64,000 nt of DNA from positions 278,608 through 342,607 of the IMG/VR virus record IMGVR_UViG_3300020469_003050; one strand, written 5' to 3'. Of the stretch, positions 2,215-50,084 are shown one piece after another. Every line of letters starts with the position of its first letter. Position 1 is the stretch's first letter. Position numbers and translations under genes: made by a program. The notes beneath the pieces are model-generated. The model was not told the origin of the DNA and did not search any database. It was given only the letters and a program-made list of their open reading frames with translations.

Positions 2215-2568
2215 ATGAAAACATCAATTATCGGACTGCTAGTCGCAGTCTTTTTTTCTGCAACGGCGTTTGCAGAAGACACAAGTGTATCAAATGATAT
2301 TTCTTGGTCTCTAACATTAGAGAGACAAACAGAAGCAAATGCTAATACAGGCGAACTAATGGGGACTATGGAAGTTTTAGGACTTGATGTTTCTGCGGGT
2401 GGACTGTGGAACATTGATAAATCAGGTGAAGATTTTATTGACTTGAATAAAACGATGTTAAATGTTAGCCACTCGCTTTCTGACCAAGCAAAAGTGTATC
2501 TAAAGAATGACTTTAGTACAGATTGGGACAGAACTGAGTCAACAATAGGTCTACAAATTACGTTTTAA
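2215..2568 (+). CDS. Secreted small beta-barrel outer-membrane-protein-like protein
   Basis: AAGGAGG RBS, signal peptide (MKTSIIGLLVAVFFSATAFA), alternating beta strands, C-terminal IGLQITF with terminal Phe. Confidence 0.55.
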   Translation: MKTSIIGLLVAVFFSATAFAEDTSVSNDISWSLTLERQTEANANTGELMGTMEVLGLDVSAGGLWNIDKSGEDFIDLNKTMLNVSHSLSDQAKVYLKNDFSTDWDRTESTIGLQITF

Positions 2569-2606
2569 TTTGTTGACAAAAACACCTCTATAGTGTATAA
2601 ATATAG

Positions 2607-2885
2607 ATGTTAACGTTGAAGCAAGTTCAACACTATACAGGACCTGGGGGCAGTACCCAGCAGGTCCACCATAAACACATTATCAGTTTGCATTAGTGTG
2701 TTTATGATGGGCCTGAACTAGGATCGACTGGTGGTTAATAGGCGAGTGGAGTTAACCGAGTGACTTCGTTATTGGTCAAACACTATAATTGCAAACGACA
2801 ATTATCAGCCAGAAATGGCAATGGCGGCCTAATTTAGGCACGTAGGGGTTGGTGACTTGCCTGGCAACAGAAAAGTCACATTTTT
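2607..2885 (+). ncRNA. ssrA: Circularly permuted (two-piece) tmRNA, tag ANDNYQPEMAMAA
   Basis: T-arm plus CAGGTCC-ACCA (2661-2671) lies upstream of GGGCCTG (2709-2715), forming an acceptor stem with G3.U70; hairpin intervening segment 2672-2708; tag ORF 2791-2832; promoter TTGACA(2573)-17-TATAAA. Outer boundaries approximate. Confidence 0.93.
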
Positions 2886-2908
2886 ATTTGGGAGTGGGTT
2901 TTTTGTAA

Positions 2909-3247
2909 ATGGCATACGTAGTAACGCAAGATTGTATAAAATGTAAGTATACTGATTGTGTGGAAGTTTGTCCCGTTGATTGCTTTTATGAGGGCAAAGA
3001 TACTTTAGTTATTAACCCAGATGAATGTATAGATTGCGGTGTTTGTGAACCCGAATGTCCTGCAGAAGCAATAATTCCTGATACGCATGAAAAATTTACA
3101 ATGCGACTCTACGATATAAATAAAAAGTGGTCAGAACAATGGCCAGTAATTACAGAAAAGCAAGATCCCTTACCTGATGCTGATTCACTAAATCCAGCAA
3201 TGGGATATTCAGAAGATAAGACAAAGTTGTTAGATGAATACGATTGA
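2909..3247 (+). CDS. fdxA: 7Fe/8Fe ferredoxin (FdxA family)
   Basis: [18 protein letters not shown] and [16 protein letters not shown] motifs. Confidence 0.93.
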
Positions 3248-6238: not shown

Positions 6239-6455
6239 ATAAGCATAAAACAATTTAGCGGTTGTTTTATTGTAGTGCAAGGAAGAGGCTGTTACCAGAC
6301 GGTCGAACTTGACTAGTTAGGGGTGGTACCCAGGCTTAAAGCTGAGAGGCTAAGAGTCACATCGTTCTACCGAACGGAACTAGGTTCCCTGGATTCAGAA
6401 TGGTATCTGTGTCGAGGGGTTGGGGGTGTAACCAAGTCCCTCCTACTTTGCTTAT
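6239..6455 (+). ncRNA. Putative structured ncRNA (about 215 nt; possibly manA-motif-like)
   Basis: GC-rich ORF-free island after a promoter; ends pair (ATAAGCA/TGCTTAT); several internal hairpins. Confidence 0.65.
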
Positions 6456-27109: not shown

Positions 27110-27550
27110 ATGTATGAGTACCGATGTAAAATACTAAGAATAGTAGACGGAGACACAGTAGACGTTGATATTGACTTAGGCTTTGGTGTATGGATGCACA
27201 GAGAAAGAGTTAGGATTATGGGTATTGATACTCCTGAGTCTAGAACCAGAGATTTAACTGAAAAGAAATTCGGACTTGCGGCTAAAGAGTTTGTAAGATT
27301 TTTAATGCCAGTTGGGTCTAGTCAAATTATCATGACACAAAAAGATAAGACAGGTAAGTTTGGCAGAATTTTAGGAGACTTTAAAATCTGGGATAAAGAT
27401 AAAGATGATTATGTAACATTTACTACAGTTATGTTAGACAATCATCATGCAGTCCCTTATGAAGGTCAATCAAAAGACGCCATACAAGAACAACACCTGG
27501 AAAACAGAAAATGGCTAATAGAAGCAGGCCAAGTTAAATTGGAGGACTAA
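27110..27550 (+). CDS. Thermonuclease (SNase) family
   Basis: RIVDGDT, RIMGIDTPE, GKFGRILG; GGAGAGG RBS. Confidence 0.9.
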   Translation: MYEYRCKILRIVDGDTVDVDIDLGFGVWMHRERVRIMGIDTPESRTRDLTEKKFGLAAKEFVRFLMPVGSSQIIMTQKDKTGKFGRILGDFKIWDKDKDDYVTFTTVMLDNHHAVPYEGQSKDAIQEQHLENRKWLIEAGQVKLED

Positions 27551-27553
27551 AGA

Positions 27554-28384
27554 ATGGCTTTTAAGTTTAATTTCACTGTAGAACATGTAGCAGAATTACT
27601 ACCACGCATAGATGCTAACGAATGGCACGATGCAATGACTAGAGTTTTGCCTAGGTGGGATATTGATACCGTTGATAGAGTAGCAGGTTTTATTGCTCAG
27701 ACGGCTCATGAGTCCGCTGGATTTACTGTTCTATCTGAAAATCTAAATTACAGTGCAGATGCACTAGATAAGATTTTCCCGAAATATTTTAAACGTGCAG
27801 GAAGAAATGCACAAGAATATCATAGACAACCAGAAAAAATCGCAAACGTAATCTATGCAAATCGTATGGATAACGGAGATACTGACTCTGGTGACGGTTG
27901 GAGATTTAGAGGTGGGGGAATCCTACAACTAACAGGTCGTCACAACTATACAAAGTTTGGAGAGTCAGAAAGAAGAACTGCGGAAGAATGTACTGATTTT
28001 GTTCGCACACCTATTGGTGCATTAGCAAGTGCATGTTGGTTCTGGGAGACTAACAATATTAATCGTTATTGTGATGCACAAGATATTGTTGGAATGACAA
28101 AACGTATCAATGGTGGAACTATAGGACTAGAAGACCGTAAGAAACATTATGCACATGCGATAGAAGTACTAGGTGGTCATTATGATCCAAAAGAAGTACT
28201 AGAGACTGTTCGTAAAGGTAGCAAAGGAAGTACTGTTGCAAAAATGCAAAAAGCCCTTGGTATTAGTGCAGATGGAGATTTCGGCCCTGGAACAGAAGCG
28301 AAGTTGAAAGAATGGCAAACAAGTCAAGGACTAGTTGCTGACGGTATTGCAGGACCAAAAACTTTAGCGAAACTATTGGGTTAA
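27554..28384 (+). CDS. Endolysin, GH19 family with C-terminal PG-binding domain
   Basis: FIAQTAHES, ENLNYS, FRGGG.LQLTG, TKRINGG; DGDFGPGT and DGIAGPKT. Confidence 0.92.
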   Translation: MAFKFNFTVEHVAELLPRIDANEWHDAMTRVLPRWDIDTVDRVAGFIAQTAHESAGFTVLSENLNYSADALDKIFPKYFKRAGRNAQEYHRQPEKIANVIYANRMDNGDTDSGDGWRFRGGGILQLTGRHNYTKFGESERRTAEECTDFVRTPIGALASACWFWETNNINRYCDAQDIVGMTKRINGGTIGLEDRKKHYAHAIEVLGGHYDPKEVLETVRKGSKGSTVAKMQKALGISADGDFGPGTEAKLKEWQTSQGLVADGIAGPKTLAKLLG

Positions 28385-39725: not shown

Positions 39726-39755
39726 GTCCTTTGATTACTCTATTAAGGCAGGGAA

Positions 39756-40928
39756 ATGCATATTGAAAATGAAATAAAATTAAACTACGATGATGTTCTA
39801 ATCAGACCTAAACGTAGTACATTAGGATCACGTAAAGCAGTTGACTTAGAACGTGGCTTTAATTTTCCAAATTATAAATCTTATGTAGCAAAAGATGTAT
39901 TGCCAGACGGATATCCTGTAGTTGAAAAACAAGATAAAGATTTTCGTGGTGTTCCTATTATTGCAAGTAATATGGATGGTGTTGGTACATTTGAAATGGC
40001 TGATAAATTAGCTGAACAGAAAATTATGACATGCCTAGTCAAAACATATTCAGTAGATGAACTTGTCAGTTTTTATGATGGTGACATAGATAGTAAAAGA
40101 AAAGATTTTGTAGCATATTCTATGGGCATTACTGAAAATGATGAACAAAAATTTAAAGTAGTATATCAACAAACATCAAATATTAAATATGTTTGCATTG
40201 ATGTAGCAAATGGATATTCAGAAAGATTTATAGACTTTGTAAGAGAGTTTAGAATGAATTATCCTCATGTAGTAATTATTGCAGGTAATGTAGTTACTGC
40301 TGACCAGACACAGGAGTTAATCTTAAATGGAGCAGATATCGTTAAAGTGGGTATTGGTCCTGGCAGTGTTTGTACTACAAGGATACAAACTGGTGTGGGT
40401 TATCCTCAATTATCGGCAGTTATGGAGTGTGCCGATGCCGCTCATGGTCTTAATGGACATATTATTGCTGATGGCGGTTGTACTTGTCCTGGTGATGTAG
40501 CAAAAGCATTTGCCGGCGGAGCAGATTATGTTATGTTAGGTGGAATGTTAGCAGGACATGATGAGGGTGGAGGCAAAATTGTTACTAAACATATTGCAAC
40601 AGGTGGAGCATACAAAACATCTGAAGGAACATTTGTTCCTTATTTCGAAGAACAGAATTTTATTCAGTTTTATGGAATGAGTTCAGATGCGGCTAACACA
40701 AAACATTTTGGTGGTCTTAAAGATTATCGTGCTAGTGAAGGTCGTGAAGTGTTAGTTCCATATAGAGGAAATGTAGAAAACACAATACAGACTATTTTAG
40801 GTGGCATTCGTTCAACTTGCACTTATGCAGGTGCAAAAAGGTTGAAACATTTATCAAAATGTGCTACATTTGTTAGAACAAATAGTCAGTTTAATAGAAC
40901 ATATGAATCAACAACAACAAAAATGTGA
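39756..40928 (+). CDS. guaC: GMP reductase
   Basis: [46 protein letters not shown]. Confidence 0.95.
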
Positions 40929-44813: not shown

Positions 44814-45056
44814 ATGAAAGCAACAGTATACAGTAAAAACGCATGTGGGTATTGCGTACAAGCAAAGAATTTATTAAAAATGAAGGGTATCGACATTACA
44901 GAATATAATATACAATTAGACAACGATGCCCGTGTAAAGCTATTTGAAGAATGTAGTAAGATTAATGTAGTTCCAAGAACCGCACCTCAAATATGGTTAG
45001 ACGATGAATACATCGGTGGTTTCCATGAATTACAGAAACATTTTGAAAATGCATGA
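44814..45056 (+). CDS. Glutaredoxin
   Basis: CGYC, TAPQI, IGGF. Confidence 0.9.
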   Translation: MKATVYSKNACGYCVQAKNLLKMKGIDITEYNIQLDNDARVKLFEECSKINVVPRTAPQIWLDDEYIGGFHELQKHFENA

Positions 45057-45672
45057 TTATACTTTCTTAACAGGTGCACCAGGATCAAGATGGTCTGGTG
45101 TTGCACAAATCATTTCAGAGAACTTCAATTATAACAATTCAGATGAAACAGACTGGAGAGTTTACAAGCATGGAGAATTCTCAGGTCATAGAGGAGCCTA
45201 TTGGGGTCCACATATGGAATTAGGGCAAAACTTTCATAGTCTTGAAAGAAATTACAATAATGATATCATAGGATTTAAGAAAGCATGTGATGTGGGATTT
45301 ATAGAACCCATTTCAGCAAAACCAAAGATGATTAAGTGTCACCAATTTGCTTACGGTTTAGATTGGTTAAATCAAAATATAGAAAATTCACAGATACTAA
45401 TAGTCAAAAGAGGAAACCAAGAATGCTTTGATTGGTGGCATGAAGCAGGTGGTTGGAATATATACTATCCAAAATATACATGGTATGTAGATGATAATCA
45501 TATGATGCATTATATTGAAGCAGAAAATAAACTATTAAATGAATTCGTTAAAAGAAATGGTGAATGGGAAGATTTCAATGAAGAATGGTTAACAGAAGAA
45601 TATGGTGAACATAATATTGAAATCGACAAAGACAAATATAGTGACGTAAAGGTTTGCCTAATTAAAACTTGA
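45049..45672 (+). CDS. Sulfotransferase-like P-loop protein
   Basis: FLTGAPGSRWSGV, IKCH, LIVKR. Confidence 0.5.
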   Translation: MHDYTFLTGAPGSRWSGVAQIISENFNYNNSDETDWRVYKHGEFSGHRGAYWGPHMELGQNFHSLERNYNNDIIGFKKACDVGFIEPISAKPKMIKCHQFAYGLDWLNQNIENSQILIVKRGNQECFDWWHEAGGWNIYYPKYTWYVDDNHMMHYIEAENKLLNEFVKRNGEWEDFNEEWLTEEYGEHNIEIDKDKYSDVKVCLIKT

Positions 45673-45719
45673 CATTATACAAAAAGGTGCTATATTAATA
45701 TATAATTACAAGGAGTATT

Positions 45720-46052
45720 ATGTACGAGTTCGAAAATGACGATATGATAGATGTTGAAGGTGTTGAACTTCAAGGGTATGTATCTACAACATACCAAAGA
45801 TTAGTTGACACATTTGGCGATCCTACTATAGGTAGTGATATGTCTGATGCTGAATGGGTCTTACAATTCAAAGTACCTCATGATACTGAGGGGTATAGCG
45901 AAGAAGTTGATTACATTGCGGCAACTATACACAAAATAGATGAGTGGGATGAAGATAACATTCCTGATGGAATATATAAATGGCATGTAAGTGGTTTCGA
46001 TGAGGAAGCACTTGATTGTGTCAAGGAAGTATTAGGCGAAGAAGATGAGTAA
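45720..46052 (+). CDS. Acidic hypothetical protein
   Basis: LQGYV.TTY..LV..FGDP; promoter TTGACA(45669)-16-TATATT. Confidence 0.65.
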   Translation: MYEFENDDMIDVEGVELQGYVSTTYQRLVDTFGDPTIGSDMSDAEWVLQFKVPHDTEGYSEEVDYIAATIHKIDEWDEDNIPDGIYKWHVSGFDEEALDCVKEVLGEEDE

Positions 46053-46224
46053 AAAGAAAGCACATTTTTTATATCTTATTGACCATCCTGATGGCAATAA
46101 CGAAATGAAATTAATGACAGAATCAGAAGCGAAACATTATGCGTTGATACATGAAAGAGAAGTCTGGAATGTTCATAGTTCAATGGATTTAGAACCTGAT
46201 ATGCTTGAGCCTCAAAAACTATAA
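46045..46224 (+). CDS. Hypothetical protein (59 aa)
   Basis: Open frame overlapping previous stop. Confidence 0.45.
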   Translation: MSKKKAHFLYLIDHPDGNNEMKLMTESEAKHYALIHEREVWNVHSSMDLEPDMLEPQKL

Positions 46225-46274
46225 TATACAATATATTGTAAGTAAATTAATCCACAAATTGTAGTAAATACTTA

Positions 46275-46376
46275 TGCAGGCTTTTTGCCTGCACTTTAGT
46301 ACGGTGCTCCCTGCACCGTTCTCTAGTCCTCTTCGCCAACTGACCCGGTAGTAGCAATACTATCGGGTCTTTTTTT
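46275..46376 (+). ncRNA. Putative small RNA with CU-rich anti-SD segments
   Basis: Two perfect 7-bp hairpins, CU-rich linker, 12-bp GCAA-loop terminator plus T7; GTAAATA just upstream. Confidence 0.6.
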
Positions 46377-46675
46377 GCTTGTTTTCAAAGTGATTTCTAC
46401 GAAAATAATAAATATTTGCATGGGAAATACAAGTAGTTTTCTGTTTTACAGTTTACTATCGCAACCCAACTGATATCGCATAATAGCGATTAAAATGAAT
46501 TATTGCGAAGTCCCTTCTCTTTATGAGGTGCAAAAGGTTCGAACCGTTATATTTGCATTGCAACAGTAACAGAGAGGTCTTCTATTCAGAATATAGGGTT
46601 GCACTTTGAGTGCAACCCACTGAAACATTAATCAGTGCGATAGATAAATACATACATAAGTAAAGCAGGGAAAGT

Positions 46676-49522
46676 ATGAAGTGTTATCCACATAATGATT
46701 ATTATAGATCCGATGAATTAGAAATTGTTCCAAAACTTCTAATTGCATCTAAGGCATCTAGTGAAGTCCTTCGGTCAGTAATGGCTGAGGCAGAAACCAT
46801 TCAATCTAAACTTACCGATGAACATTATTTGACTCATATAATGAAGTCATATGATATGAGTGCTCCTGAGGGCATGGCACTTATGACTCTTTGTGAATCT
46901 CTTTTACGTACACCAGACAAAGAAACACAAGACAAACTTATCAAAGATAAATTATCAAATGCAGAATGGTATAAATTATCTAATAATAGTTTTTATTCTA
47001 AAGCGGCCAGTATTGCATTAACTCAGGCACAAATGCTTTCAGCATATGAAGGTATAGTAGGAAGAATAGGCTGGCCAGCAGTAAGAGAAATGACAAAGAC
47101 TATGGTAAAACAAATGGGTACTTTATTTGTTATGGGTAGCAACATAGAAACTGCAATAAAAAATAAGAAAAAAGGTTATGCATATTCATTTGATATGCTA
47201 GGAGAGGCCGCAACAAATTGGGAAGATGCAAATTTATACTATGAAAGATATTTAGATGCGGCTATTAAGTCAAAAGAATCCATATCTATAAAACTTAGTG
47301 CAATACACCCTAGATACGAATTAAAGAACCACAAAGACGTTTTACACACACTAGTACCTAAATTAGCCGCTATAGCTAGAGTATGCGAAGAAAACAACAC
47401 TACAATGTTTATTGATGCAGAAGAGGCACGTAGGCTCGATATAAGCATTATGATACTTGAAGAAATGCTTAAAACATACAAATTTAAAGATTTTACTATA
47501 GGATTTGCTCTACAGGCTTATCAGAAACGTGCTTTTTGGGTTATTGATACGTTAGAGACAATAGCAGAGCATAGTAGCGCCAAACTCGTTATACGGCTTG
47601 TTAAAGGCGCATATTGGGACACTGAGATAAAGTATTCACAACAAGAAGGACTAGATTATCCAGTATTTACAAGAAAAGAGAATACAGACATATCTTATCT
47701 AGCATGTACTAAAAAACTGATGCATAGTGAAAGATTGAAAACTGCATATGCTACACATAATCCATATACAGTTTCAGCAATACAATGTGTTGGTAAATGT
47801 AGTAAGCAAGAATATGAATTTCAGAAACTTTACGGAATGGGTGATAGTTTATTCAGTCAGATAGTAGGAGATACGAAAGTCAGAGTATATGCACCAGTCG
47901 GTGAGTATAAAGATTTATTAGCATATCTAATAAGACGTTTATTAGAGAATGGTGCTAACACTAGTTTTGTTCATACAAATGAAGTTGTAGATCCTTTTAA
48001 AGAAGTTAAAAAGAAAAAGAAATCACTTAAGTCATGGAAAGATTTATATCCTGGAAGAAAGAATAGTAAAGGATATGATTTAACTGATCCAGCTATGGTT
48101 GATTATATGTTAGACTCTGCGGTTCACCCTCACCATGATGAAGAATTACTTTCAGTGGAAGATAGTATAGAACATTTATACAACTATCAAAATCAATGGG
48201 CAAATACAACATTTGAACATAGAAAGAAAATTCTACTAGCATGTGCAGATAGTTTAGAAGAAGAAATGATTCCTGCGGCAAACAGATTAGTAAAATATTC
48301 TTTTAAAACATATCCAAATGCAGTTGCAGAAATTAGAGAGTCAGTTGATTTTATTCGTTACTACGTAGAACAAGCTGAATTAATGTATGGAGAAAATATC
48401 AAAATAGGTTATACCGGTGAATATAATTCTACAGTTTTTAATCCTAGAGGAACTTGGATGGTAATAGCACCTTGGAATTTTCCTTATGCAATTTTCTTAG
48501 GACCAATCGTAGCCGCATTGATTACAGGAAATACCGTATTGGCAAAACCCGCACCACAGACCCTAGAAATTGCAAAAGTTGTATTGGGTGCAATGCATCA
48601 CGTTGGTGTACCAATAGATGCACTACGTATGTGTGACCCTGATATTGAAGAGGCTTCTAAAGCAATCAAAGATGAACGTATATCAGGTATAACGTTCACA
48701 GGCTCTCATAAGAGTGCTAAGACTATACAGAGGCTTATTGCTGAACGTGATGGGCCTATTATACCTTTCATTGCAGAAACAGGTGGTATAAATTCTATGA
48801 TTGCAGATTCTACTTGTTTACCTGAACAGTTAGTCGAAGATGTATCATATGGTGCATTCGATAGTGCAGGACAAAGATGTTCAGCAACTAGATTTTTATT
48901 TCTTCAAAAAGAAAATAGTGAAGAAATTATTAATATGTTAAAACATAAAATTAAAGTAATATCACTTGGTAATGCAGATGATTTAAATACAGACGTATCA
49001 CGTGTTATTGATGGTGTGGCATATGCAAAGATACAAGAAAGAATTGCAGTACTTGAAGAAAACGAAACATTAATTGCAACGAAATCTCGTAATGGAAAAG
49101 AGTTACCAAAATTAATTATCCCACCAAGTGCTTATCTTGTAACAGACTACAAAAAGTATTTTGATGAAGAAATATTTGGCCCATTGTTGCATGTTTATGT
49201 TTATGAAAAAGATGAATTAGATGAAATAGTATCTTTTATAAATGAAAGTAAATTTGGACTAACATTAAGTATACATTCACGTGTAACTAAGTTCTATGAT
49301 AACATAGCTAAGAAAATGAAGATAGGTAACATTTATATAAACAGAGACCAAATAGGTGCAGTTGTAGAGACTCAACCATTCGGTGGATACGGTTTAAGTG
49401 GTACTGGACCTAAAGCAGGTGGTCCTAATTATCTAACTCCTTATGTGTGGGAGAAACACATAAGCATCAACACTTCTGCTATCGGCGGAGACACTTTGTT
49501 ATTGACTTCTGAACCTCGATAG
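46676..49522 (+). CDS. putA: Bifunctional proline dehydrogenase / P5C dehydrogenase
   Basis: SFDMLGEAA, SIKLS, RLVKGAYWD, ATHN, RRLLENGAN, PWNFP, ETGG, FDSAGQRCSA, PFGG.GLSGTGPKAGG. Confidence 0.96.
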   Translation: MKCYPHNDYYRSDELEIVPKLLIASKASSEVLRSVMAEAETIQSKLTDEHYLTHIMKSYDMSAPEGMALMTLCESLLRTPDKETQDKLIKDKLSNAEWYKLSNNSFYSKAASIALTQAQMLSAYEGIVGRIGWPAVREMTKTMVKQMGTLFVMGSNIETAIKNKKKGYAYSFDMLGEAATNWEDANLYYERYLDAAIKSKESISIKLSAIHPRYELKNHKDVLHTLVPKLAAIARVCEENNTTMFIDAEEARRLDISIMILEEMLKTYKFKDFTIGFALQAYQKRAFWVIDTLETIAEHSSAKLVIRLVKGAYWDTEIKYSQQEGLDYPVFTRKENTDISYLACTKKLMHSERLKTAYATHNPYTVSAIQCVGKCSKQEYEFQKLYGMGDSLFSQIVGDTKVRVYAPVGEYKDLLAYLIRRLLENGANTSFVHTNEVVDPFKEVKKKKKSLKSWKDLYPGRKNSKGYDLTDPAMVDYMLDSAVHPHHDEELLSVEDSIEHLYNYQNQWANTTFEHRKKILLACADSLEEEMIPAANRLVKYSFKTYPNAVAEIRESVDFIRYYVEQAELMYGENIKIGYTGEYNSTVFNPRGTWMVIAPWNFPYAIFLGPIVAALITGNTVLAKPAPQTLEIAKVVLGAMHHVGVPIDALRMCDPDIEEASKAIKDERISGITFTGSHKSAKTIQRLIAERDGPIIPFIAETGGINSMIADSTCLPEQLVEDVSYGAFDSAGQRCSATRFLFLQKENSEEIINMLKHKIKVISLGNADDLNTDVSRVIDGVAYAKIQERIAVLEENETLIATKSRNGKELPKLIIPPSAYLVTDYKKYFDEEIFGPLLHVYVYEKDELDEIVSFINESKFGLTLSIHSRVTKFYDNIAKKMKIGNIYINRDQIGAVVETQPFGGYGLSGTGPKAGGPNYLTPYVWEKHISINTSAIGGDTLLLTSEPR

Positions 49523-49562: not shown

Positions 49563-50084
49563 ATGAGCGATAAATTACACATATCTTGGGATAGATATGA
49601 AGAAGAAATCGAAAAATTAGCTATAATGGTTCACGAAGATGGATACAAATTCAATCAAGTAGTTTGTATTGCAAAAGGTGGATTAAGAGTAGGAGATATT
49701 TTTGCTAGATTATTTGATGTACCATTAGCAATAATGTCAGTAGAATCATATCATGGTGATGAAGTAAAGGATCAAAGAGGACAAATTATCTTTGGAAATT
49801 CTCTTGCTAAAACAACTCCTAACATAGGTAGCAAAATTTTATTAGTAGATGATTTAGCAGATTCTGGAACAACATTTGAGAAGTGTGTAGAATGGTTACA
49901 ATTCACAGAAGGTTTTTTCATTGAAGATATTAAAACTGCGACAATGTGGTTAAAAGGAAGTTCATCATATACACCAGACTATTTCGTAGAATATTTGGAA
50001 GACAACCCATGGATTGTTCAGCCAATGGAAAAATACGAAGAAATAAATATAGAACAACTTATAAAGAACAGGGAACAACAATGA
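49563..50084 (+). CDS. Xanthine/guanine-type phosphoribosyltransferase
   Basis: ISW, CIAKGGL, LLVDDLADSGTT, PDY, WIVQP. Confidence 0.8.
   Translation: MSDKLHISWDRYEEEIEKLAIMVHEDGYKFNQVVCIAKGGLRVGDIFARLFDVPLAIMSVESYHGDEVKDQRGQIIFGNSLAKTTPNIGSKILLVDDLADSGTTFEKCVEWLQFTEGFFIEDIKTATMWLKGSSSYTPDYFVEYLEDNPWIVQPMEKYEEINIEQLIKNREQQ

What the first reader, a model, noticed from the sequence alone, without database searches (positions are those of the whole stretch)
46262..46376. Small anti-Shine-Dalgarno RNA whose loop matches the putA and guaC RBSs
Seen: a roughly 100-nt ORF-free unit with a late-like GTAAATA, hairpin TGCAGGC/GCCTGCA, hairpin ACGGTGC-TCCCT-GCACCGT, linker TCTCTAGTCCTCTTCGCC and a strong terminator. 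TCCCTGC (46308-46314) is exactly complementary to GCAGGGA, found in the RBS of putA (46665-46671) and of guaC (39748-39754). Established: alphaproteobacterial AbcR/alpha-r15 and cuckoo sRNAs use CU-rich anti-SD loops to repress amino-acid uptake and metabolism mRNAs. Inference: a phage sRNA that times its own metabolic genes or silences host mRNAs. Caveat: a 7-nt match can arise by chance and only 5 nt are in the loop.
Basis: partly seen in the sequence, partly recalled or inferred. Interest (0 to 1): 0.65.

Follow-up and report, generated by a model that had tools for sequence, protein, structure and literature searches.

The report
Phage small RNA beside putA

Summary
At 46262-46376 there is an ORF-free unit made of a TAAATA motif, two hairpins, a pyrimidine-rich linker and a strong terminator (fold z = -7.7). 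It has no Rfam family. It occurs once per genome, in a 342.6-kb T4-capsid-like marine jumbo phage. I found 28 sequence variants in 49 related loci. Across them, 17 of 30 base pairs covary and 98.5% of cells stay paired. In all 43 loci with enough downstream DNA, the unit lies directly upstream of putA on the same strand.

The proposed mechanism fails. The hairpin-2 loop (UCCCU) varies between clades. GCAGGGA is not kept at the putA or guaC ribosome-binding sites of relatives that carry the same loop. The 7-nt match is at chance level.

The constrained part is the linker, 46320-46341. In sister clades it is complementary, over up to 16 bp, to an 18-nt box in the adjacent transcript. That box lies inside a 178-197-aa gene ("ORF X"), or on the putA Shine-Dalgarno sequence where ORF X was lost. 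In the window's own clade ORF X is a pseudogene (46400-46675) and the box has decayed, so the current target here is unknown.

Verdict: this is a new phage sRNA family of familiar architecture. Base pairing through the linker is likely but unproven, and no transcript evidence could be obtained.

The parts
46265..46270 (+). TAAATA motif, a putative T4-late-like promoter element. By T4 geometry it predicts a transcription start at G46276.
   Evidence: Invariant in all 28 variants, always with exactly 5 nt before the G that opens hairpin 1. ATAAATA is 51% intergenic in this genome against a 7.6% intergenic fraction. The phage has a T4 gp23-like capsid gene. Promoter function is inferred, not shown.
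46275..46293 (+). Hairpin 1, a 5' stem-loop with a variable loop.
   Evidence: Four of 6 pairs change on both sides and 98.1% of cells are paired. It is present in every variant fold.
46294..46326 (+). Hairpin 2. The core stem is 46301-46307 with 46313-46319, the loop is 46308-46312, and outer pairs extend the stem.
   Evidence: Six of 12 pairs change on both sides and 97.8% of cells are paired. The loop sequence is not conserved across clades.
46320..46341 (+). Invariant pyrimidine-rich linker, the proposed seed. The core UCCUCUUCGCCAAC is single-stranded.
   Evidence: It lies within a 34-nt exact match between G0 and the 342-kb relative G1. That is the longest non-coding exact match between the two genomes, which average 60% amino-acid identity. 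The core is unpaired in all 28 variant folds. It is complementary to the ORF X/putA-leader box in sister clades. Caveat: 19 nt of it were the metagenome search key.
46342..46376 (+). Intrinsic terminator: a 12-bp stem, a 4-nt loop and a U7 tract.
   Evidence: Found by the terminator scan. Seven of 12 pairs change on both sides and 99.4% of cells are paired. A U-run follows in all variants.
46400..46675 (+). Decayed remnant of ORF X, forming a roughly 260-nt putA leader. It keeps TAAATA (46409-46414), 5 nt, then ATG (46420). Conserved blocks lie at 46506-46519 and 46571-46584, and a covarying hairpin at 46596-46618.
   Evidence: Intact ORF X of 178-197 aa occupies this position in other clades. 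tblastn finds only a stop-containing remnant here. RNA-library contigs join 46460/46467 onward to the putA coding sequence.
46643..46651 (+). GATAAATAC, a match to the genome's intergenic consensus motif, 25 nt before the putA ATG. It occupies the place where sister clades carry the linker-complementary box.
   Evidence: Motif consensus. Alignment of the putA upstream regions.
46676..49522 (+). putA, a bifunctional proline dehydrogenase / P5C dehydrogenase. It is the gene always found downstream of the RNA.
   Evidence: Pfam Pro_dh, Aldedh and Pro_dh-DNA_bdg domains. The RNA lies upstream of putA in 43 of 43 loci.

Best explanation
Positions 46276-46376 encode a small RNA of about 101 nt belonging to a previously undescribed family. 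The family is confined to one clade of marine T4-capsid-like jumbo phages.

The gene has its own TAAATA promoter-like element, two structural hairpins, an accessible invariant pyrimidine-rich stretch and a strong intrinsic terminator. It most likely works by base pairing through the linker (core UCCUCUUCGCCAAC), not through the hairpin-2 loop.

Its ancestral partner appears to be an 18-nt box in the neighbouring ORF X-putA transcript. Inside ORF X the pairing could affect mRNA stability or processing. In lineages that lost ORF X, the box abuts the putA Shine-Dalgarno sequence, so pairing would block translation of proline dehydrogenase.

In the window's own lineage ORF X is a pseudogene and the box has decayed. 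The RNA here remains under strong structural and sequence constraint but has no recognisable site in the putA leader. It must therefore act on another target, phage or host, that I could not identify.

Shown: the structure, its conservation, its synteny with putA, and the complementarity in sister clades. Inferred: the independent promoter, action in trans, and the direction of regulation.
For: - Structure: z = -7.74; 17 of 30 pairs have compensatory changes; 98.5% of cells are paired, against at most 47% in slid controls. All 28 variants fold alike at 97-105 nt.
- Promoter-like motif: TAAATA is invariant at fixed spacing, and ATAAATA is enriched about 7-fold in intergenic DNA.
- Copy number: one copy per genome in G0 to G3.
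- Synteny: upstream of putA in 43 of 43 loci, even though the upstream gene differs between clades.
- Linker conservation: part of the longest non-coding exact match between G0 and G1.
- Linker-box duplexes: -19.4 to -26.1 kcal/mol, up to 16 bp. They overlap the putA SD in the L048, L063, L068 and L077 loci. In those four loci, 0.3-1.3% of shuffled linkers pair as well.
- Box retention: the box survived in non-coding form after ORF X was lost in at least two or three lineages. In L046 an AA-to-GG change keeps G.U pairs.
- Coding clades: the box region is the longest run of low synonymous variation within ORF X.
Against: - No transcript evidence. RNA-library contigs from 4 runs do not cover 46039-46459. 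Contigs cannot show absence, and small RNAs are usually lost from such libraries.
- In the window clade, linker pairing with the putA leader is at chance level (42-96% of shuffled linkers do as well), and no conserved phage target was found.
- Linker invariance among the metagenome loci is partly by construction, because a 19-mer of it was the search key.
- All box observations are homologous, so they amount to essentially one complementarity observed repeatedly. Inside ORF X the box is also constrained by its coding role.
- Strict adjacency to putA fits a cis-acting role equally well.
Confidence: 0.5

Rival explanations
1. Cis-acting leader or attenuator of the putA operon. Transcription from the TAAATA at 46265 normally stops at the terminator. 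A factor that binds the invariant linker (a protein, an RNA, or the ribosome) would control read-through into ORF X/putA. In read-through transcripts the linker could pair in cis with the downstream box.
For: The unit is always directly upstream of putA on the same strand, including in the window clade where the box is lost. The box lies downstream on the same strand.
Against: The terminator arms covary only with each other while the linker is invariant, so no conserved antiterminator pairing is visible. Loops and junctions are not conserved, unlike a ligand-binding aptamer. A second TAAATA follows the terminator in every clade, 5 nt before the ORF X start codon, which suggests a separate promoter for the operon. 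The terminator is very strong: 11-12 bp plus 5-8 U.
Confidence: 0.2
2. The hairpin-2 loop and stem sequence UCCCUGC (46308-46314) acts as an anti-SD element that pairs with GCAGGGA at the putA and guaC ribosome-binding sites.
For: Both 7-nt matches exist in this genome.
Against: The loop is not conserved across clades. Relatives with the identical loop lack GCAGGGA at putA and at guaC. The match frequency is at chance level. Two of the 7 nt (G46313, C46314) are buried in a covarying stem.
Confidence: 0.03
3. A protein-binding or decoy RNA, in which the invariant pyrimidine-rich stretch sequesters an RNA-binding protein. Alternatively, simply a structured 3' end and terminator module of the upstream operon with no regulatory role.
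For: Twenty-one invariant single-stranded nucleotides are more than a typical seed. No target was found in the window's own genome. The terminator would also end transcripts of the upstream genes, which RNA-library contigs cover as far as 46036-46038.
Against: The upstream gene differs between clades while the RNA stays with putA. The invariant TAAATA at fixed spacing argues for an own start site. A bare terminator would need neither two covarying hairpins nor an invariant linker. The length of the invariant stretch matches the 16-17 nt duplex formed with the ORF X box.
Confidence: 0.15

Closest known systems
Rho-independent-terminated, base-pairing bacterial and phage sRNAs, for example prophage DicF and other phage-derived sRNAs reviewed in PMC12197685 (seen only as a search hit, not read; the comparison rests on general knowledge).
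   Same: About 100 nt; 5' structural hairpins; an accessible conserved seed; a terminator with a U-tail; in sister clades, complementarity that overlaps a Shine-Dalgarno region.
   Different: It is encoded by a lytic-type T4-capsid-like marine jumbo phage. It is tied to an auxiliary metabolic gene (putA). The apparent partner is the neighbouring transcript. It has no sequence or covariance-model similarity to any described family. No transcript has been demonstrated.
   Same: A CU-rich sequence with anti-SD character, and a link to amino-acid metabolism.
   Different: Rfam gave no match, even at E <= 10. The CU-rich functional element is a linker, not hairpin loops. The loop motif is not conserved. 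The RNA is absent from 185,579 bacterial and archaeal species genomes at the level of an exact 19-mer, apart from one match in Kitasatospora that has no covariance-model support.
Cyanophage and T4-like phage non-coding RNAs linked to auxiliary metabolic genes, such as the antisense RNA at psbA in S-PM2 (from memory, not checked here), and the manA RNA present in this same window.
   Same: Marine T4-like phage; non-coding RNA next to a host-derived metabolic gene.
   Different: It is not antisense to its neighbour. It is a separate terminator-ended unit on the same strand, with limited trans-type complementarity.
Transcription attenuators and riboswitch leaders.
   Same: Sits in the 5' region of the regulated gene on the same strand and ends in an intrinsic terminator.
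   Different: No conserved junction or loop core; no alternative antiterminator pairing; a second promoter-like motif lies between the terminator and the operon.

Membership tests
AbcR / alpha-r15 (Rfam sRNA family) | Match to the family covariance model | tested here: not met
   No match at gathering threshold over the window, nor at E <= 10 over 46000-46800.
AbcR / alpha-r15 and cuckoo sRNAs | Conserved CU-rich anti-SD motif displayed in hairpin loops | tested here: not met
   The hairpin-2 loop varies (UCCCU, GCCCU, AUCU, GUCC, AUAA, UCAU, UUA, AUUCG) and the hairpin-1 loop is fully variable.
AbcR / alpha-r15 and cuckoo sRNAs | Encoded in alphaproteobacterial chromosomes or plasmids | tested here: not met
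   The exact 19-mer of the linker is found in no bacterial species genome apart from one Kitasatospora match that has no covariance-model hit. All true copies lie in phage-like contigs next to putA.
Trans-acting base-pairing sRNA (generic class) | Conserved secondary structure with an intrinsic terminator | tested here: met
Trans-acting base-pairing sRNA (generic class) | Conserved, accessible single-stranded seed | tested here: met
   The linker core is unpaired in all 28 folds and is invariant in the relatives found independently of the linker key: G1 and G2 by the putA protein search, G2 also by the hairpin-2 19-mer.
Trans-acting base-pairing sRNA (generic class) | Conserved complementary target site | tested here: inconclusive
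   Met in sister clades: the box in ORF X or on the putA SD gives -17 to -26 kcal/mol, and in four short-leader loci only 0.3-1.3% of shuffles pair as well. Not met in the window clade.
Trans-acting base-pairing sRNA (generic class) | Discrete transcript with its own 5' end | not testable with these tools
   Only assembled contigs of RNA libraries were available, and none covers 46039-46459. Contigs cannot show ends or absence.
Riboswitch / transcription attenuator | Conserved ligand-binding core and mutually exclusive terminator/antiterminator pairing | tested here: not met
   Loops and junctions are variable. The terminator arms covary only with each other, and the invariant linker cannot covary with them.

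The most novel reading that the evidence does not exclude
This is a dedicated regulatory sRNA module for an auxiliary metabolic operon in cosmopolitan marine jumbo phages. The sRNA's long seed pairs with its neighbour (ORF X-putA) to time or limit proline catabolism during infection. In lineages where the neighbour lost the site, as in this window, the sRNA has been kept because it also targets host or other phage mRNAs. The best local candidate is the endolysin-like gene at 27554.
Probability: 0.3. Interest if true: 0.7.

Novelty: new member of a known kind. Interest (0 to 1): 0.58.

Why it matters
Regulatory RNAs of lytic marine phages are almost unexplored, and how phages control their auxiliary metabolic genes is an open question. 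This is a well-supported, covarying RNA family with no Rfam entry, tied to one such gene (putA) across many ocean samples. It comes with a concrete pairing hypothesis that seed/box compensatory mutagenesis can test.

The lineage comparison adds a natural experiment. ORF X is intact in some clades and was deleted with the box spared in others. In a third state, as here, it is a pseudogene with the box lost.

If the RNA proves not to be a separate transcript, it is still a conserved cis element of a phage metabolic operon.

Tried and rejected
- Rfam over the whole window and, permissively, over the locus: only noise at the locus.
- Phage-collection blastn of 45000-48000: only a weak putA match.
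- Second conserved element at 46400-46675. I first took it for a riboswitch-like putA leader. I rejected that because it is the decayed remnant of a protein gene that is intact in other clades.
- Linker versus all 427 crudely called translation-initiation regions of the phage, and versus the whole genome on both strands, with ortholog comparison in G1 and G2. No conserved target stood out.
- Exact linker complements of 7-9 nt in initiation regions are not enriched over shuffled linkers (p = 0.08-0.54).
- Glycosyltransferase-like gene at G0 69348-70430. It has a conserved 7+6-bp site, but the gene is 77% identical between the genomes, so the conservation is uninformative.
- Endolysin-like initiation region (about 27540-27556). 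Its 8-nt complement is conserved in G0, G1 and G2, but the site also encodes the C-terminus and stop codon of the upstream gene. I keep it as a candidate only.
- MAFFT plus RNAalifold on the 28 variants recovered only hairpin 2 and the terminator, because hairpin 1 was misaligned. The model-guided alignment was used instead, which leans towards the model's structure.
- Host identification failed.
- ORF X has no Pfam or PHROG family. There is only a weak Atlas lead to Coq4.
I reran it from references.
- A two-step ORF X search by literature gave nothing specific.

Full report
CONTEXT

The window is the last 64 kb of a 342,607-bp IMG/VR virus record with direct terminal repeats. GC content is 34.8%. 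The record encodes a T4 gp23-like major capsid protein. Its closest cultured relatives are jumbo phages of Pseudomonas (PA5oct group), Vibrio, Salicola and Sinorhizobium, at 65-69% capsid identity. DNA runs holding the locus are marine, seawater or viral metagenomes from many studies. The window also carries a two-piece alpha-type tmRNA, a manA RNA and three tRNAs. The host is unknown.

THE OBSERVATION

- GTAAATA at 46264-46270.
- Hairpin 1 at 46275-46293.
- Hairpin 2 at 46301-46319, with loop 46308-46312.
- Linker at 46320-46341.
- A 12-bp terminator at 46342-46369, followed by seven T at 46370-46376.

The RNA fold has an MFE of -50.1 kcal/mol, with z = -7.74 against dinucleotide shuffles. 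No meaningful ORF overlaps the unit. GCAGGGA lies at the putA and guaC-like ribosome-binding sites, and both gene identities hold. Rfam has no family for the unit.

RELATIVES AND STRUCTURE

Exact-word scans and a covariance model (R1) found the unit in several places:
- three other viral contigs;
- 46 marine metagenome contigs.

These give 28 distinct sequences. There is one copy per genome.

On the model-guided alignment, 98.5% of cells form standard pairs. Seventeen of 30 pairs change on both sides. Controls with the 3' partners slid by 1-3 columns reach at most 47% paired and at most 5 such pairs. All 28 variants fold on their own into the same three hairpins at 97-105 nt. The unit is therefore a real structured RNA.

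The TAAATA motif is invariant and always sits exactly 5 nt before the G that opens hairpin 1. In this genome ATAAATA is 51% intergenic, against a 7.6% intergenic fraction. Its consensus is GATAAATAC. T4-type late promoters have the form TATAAATA with the start 6 nt after the last A; this is my own knowledge, not tested here. On that geometry the RNA would start at G46276, the base of hairpin 1. That would give a product of about 101 nt.

WHAT IS CONSERVED AND WHAT IS NOT

The hairpin loops are not conserved. Hairpin 2 reads UCCCU only in the window clade. Elsewhere it reads GCCCU, AUCU, GUCC, AUAA, UCAU, UUA or AUUCG, while its stem covaries.

The invariant part is the linker. Nineteen of its nucleotides were the key for the metagenome scan, so invariance in that set is partly by construction. 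Two relatives were reached independently of that key. G2 was found with a hairpin-2 word and again by the putA protein. G1 was recovered by the putA protein search. Both have the identical linker.

G0 and G1 average 60% amino-acid identity over 214 orthologues. Between them, the 34-nt exact match covering the linker is the longest non-coding exact match, longer than any tRNA match.

GCAGGGA occurs five times on the + strand, about what base composition predicts. Seventeen of the RNA's 96 7-mers have complements in two or more initiation regions.

Relatives with an identical hairpin 2 have GCAGAAGA or other sequences at the putA RBS. They have no GCAGGGA at guaC.

SYNTENY AND THE NEIGHBOUR

In all 43 loci with enough downstream DNA, the RNA lies directly upstream of putA on the same strand, at 51 to 586 nt. 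The gene upstream of the RNA differs between clades.

In several clades a 178-197-aa gene, which I call ORF X, fills the gap. It starts 5 nt after a second TAAATA and overlaps the putA start codon. It has no Pfam or PHROG family, only a weak Coq4 lead.

In the window, 46400-46675 is a decayed remnant of ORF X with stops and frameshifts. What first looked like a second conserved RNA element is therefore a pseudogene that now serves as a long putA leader. Contigs from two RNA libraries join this region to the putA coding sequence, from 46460 and 46467 onward.

THE COMPLEMENTARY BOX

The linker is complementary to an 18-nt box, ATCGTTTTGGCGAACGAG. Inside ORF X this box encodes YRFGERE. Pairing reaches 16 bp (8 + 4 + 4) at -19.7 to -22 kcal/mol.

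Lineages without ORF X keep the box in non-coding DNA:
- In L063, L068, L077, L046 and L048 it abuts the putA Shine-Dalgarno sequence. Duplex energies are -17 to -26 kcal/mol. In four of these five, only 0.3-1.3% of shuffled linkers pair as well; L046 is at 12%.
- In L006 and L062 it lies about 100 nt upstream (-19.4 and -20.3 kcal/mol).
- In L046 an AA-to-GG change preserves pairing as G.U.

A putA tree places the box-only lineages among ORF X-bearing ones, with moderate support (SH-aLRT 84-98). This implies that ORF X was lost at least two or three times with the box spared each time. Within intact ORF X, the box region is the longest run of low synonymous variation.

These observations are homologous rather than independent. 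They make the neighbouring transcript the most plausible ancestral partner of the linker.

THE WINDOW'S OWN LINEAGE

Here the box has decayed. Its place is taken by GATAAATAC (46643-46651), a match to the promoter-like consensus. Pairing between the linker and the leader is at chance level. Even so, within this clade (13 RNA variants) the stems change by compensation while the linker stays fixed. The RNA is therefore still under selection.

I searched for another target in three ways:
- all initiation regions;
- both strands of G0, G1 and G2 with orthologue comparison;
- k-mer enrichment against shuffled linkers.

Nothing is significant. The best candidate is the initiation region of an endolysin-like gene at 27554. 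Its 8-nt match is conserved in all three genomes, but the site also encodes the end of the upstream gene. Without a host genome, host targets could not be tested.

EXPRESSION

Four metatranscriptome runs hold parts of the region, but only as assembled contigs. None covers 46039-46459. That neither supports nor refutes a small transcript.

VERDICT

The pairing element, however, is the linker and not the loop. The GCAGGGA matches are coincidental. In this particular genome the cognate site is gone.

The main rival is a cis-acting leader or attenuator role. Strict synteny favours it. Against it stand the absence of any alternative pairing and the second promoter-like motif after the terminator.

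Noticed in passing
window 46400-46675; intact copies at L059:4235-4774, L055:1884-2420 and L040:504-1043: An uncharacterised 178-197-aa gene (ORF X) lies between the RNA and putA in some clades. It overlaps the putA start (ATGA) and begins 5 nt after a TAAATA motif, which would make its mRNA leaderless. It contains an HDxxH...DE motif. It has no Pfam or PHROG family, only a weak Atlas lead to Coq4. In the window it is a pseudogene.
   Followed up: partly
window 46596-46618 and homologous positions in L003, L006, L064 and L079: A perfect 10-bp hairpin inside the ORF X remnant is replaced by entirely different but equally perfect hairpins in relatives. No U-tract follows on the + strand. On the - strand it resembles a terminator.
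   Followed up: no
whole genome G0; in the window for example 46409-46414 and 46643-46651: The motif GATAAATAC (core ATAAATA) is strongly concentrated in intergenic DNA: 60 of 118 copies, against a 7.6% intergenic fraction. It typically lies 20-40 nt before start codons and resembles T4-type late promoters.
   Followed up: partly
window 2560-2923: A phage-encoded two-piece (permuted) alpha-type tmRNA with tag peptide ANDNYQPEMAMAA. It scores 122.6 bits against Rfam alpha_tmRNA.
   Followed up: no
window 6254-6452: A manA RNA motif (Rfam RF01745) at 59.8 bits, just above its gathering score of 55.2.
   Followed up: no
window 39756-40928, 46676-49522 and 49563-50084: A cluster of host-like metabolic genes: a GMP-reductase/IMPDH-like gene, putA and a phosphoribosyltransferase.
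   Followed up: partly
window 46036-46038: Contigs from three separate RNA-library runs all end within 3 nt of one another, just before the stop codon of the 110-aa ORF and at the start of the 59-aa ORF. This could be a real RNA end or an assembly break at a low-complexity stretch.
   Followed up: no
window 27540-27556: The initiation region of an endolysin-like gene (GH19-like plus a peptidoglycan-binding domain) carries GAGGACUA followed by AGAA, the strongest linker complement among this genome's initiation regions. The 8-mer is conserved in G1 and G2.
   Followed up: partly
L057 and L076, between the RNA and the ORF X remnant: An insertion of about 190 nt carrying a small ORF with its own Shine-Dalgarno sequence is present in two window-clade relatives only.
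   Followed up: no
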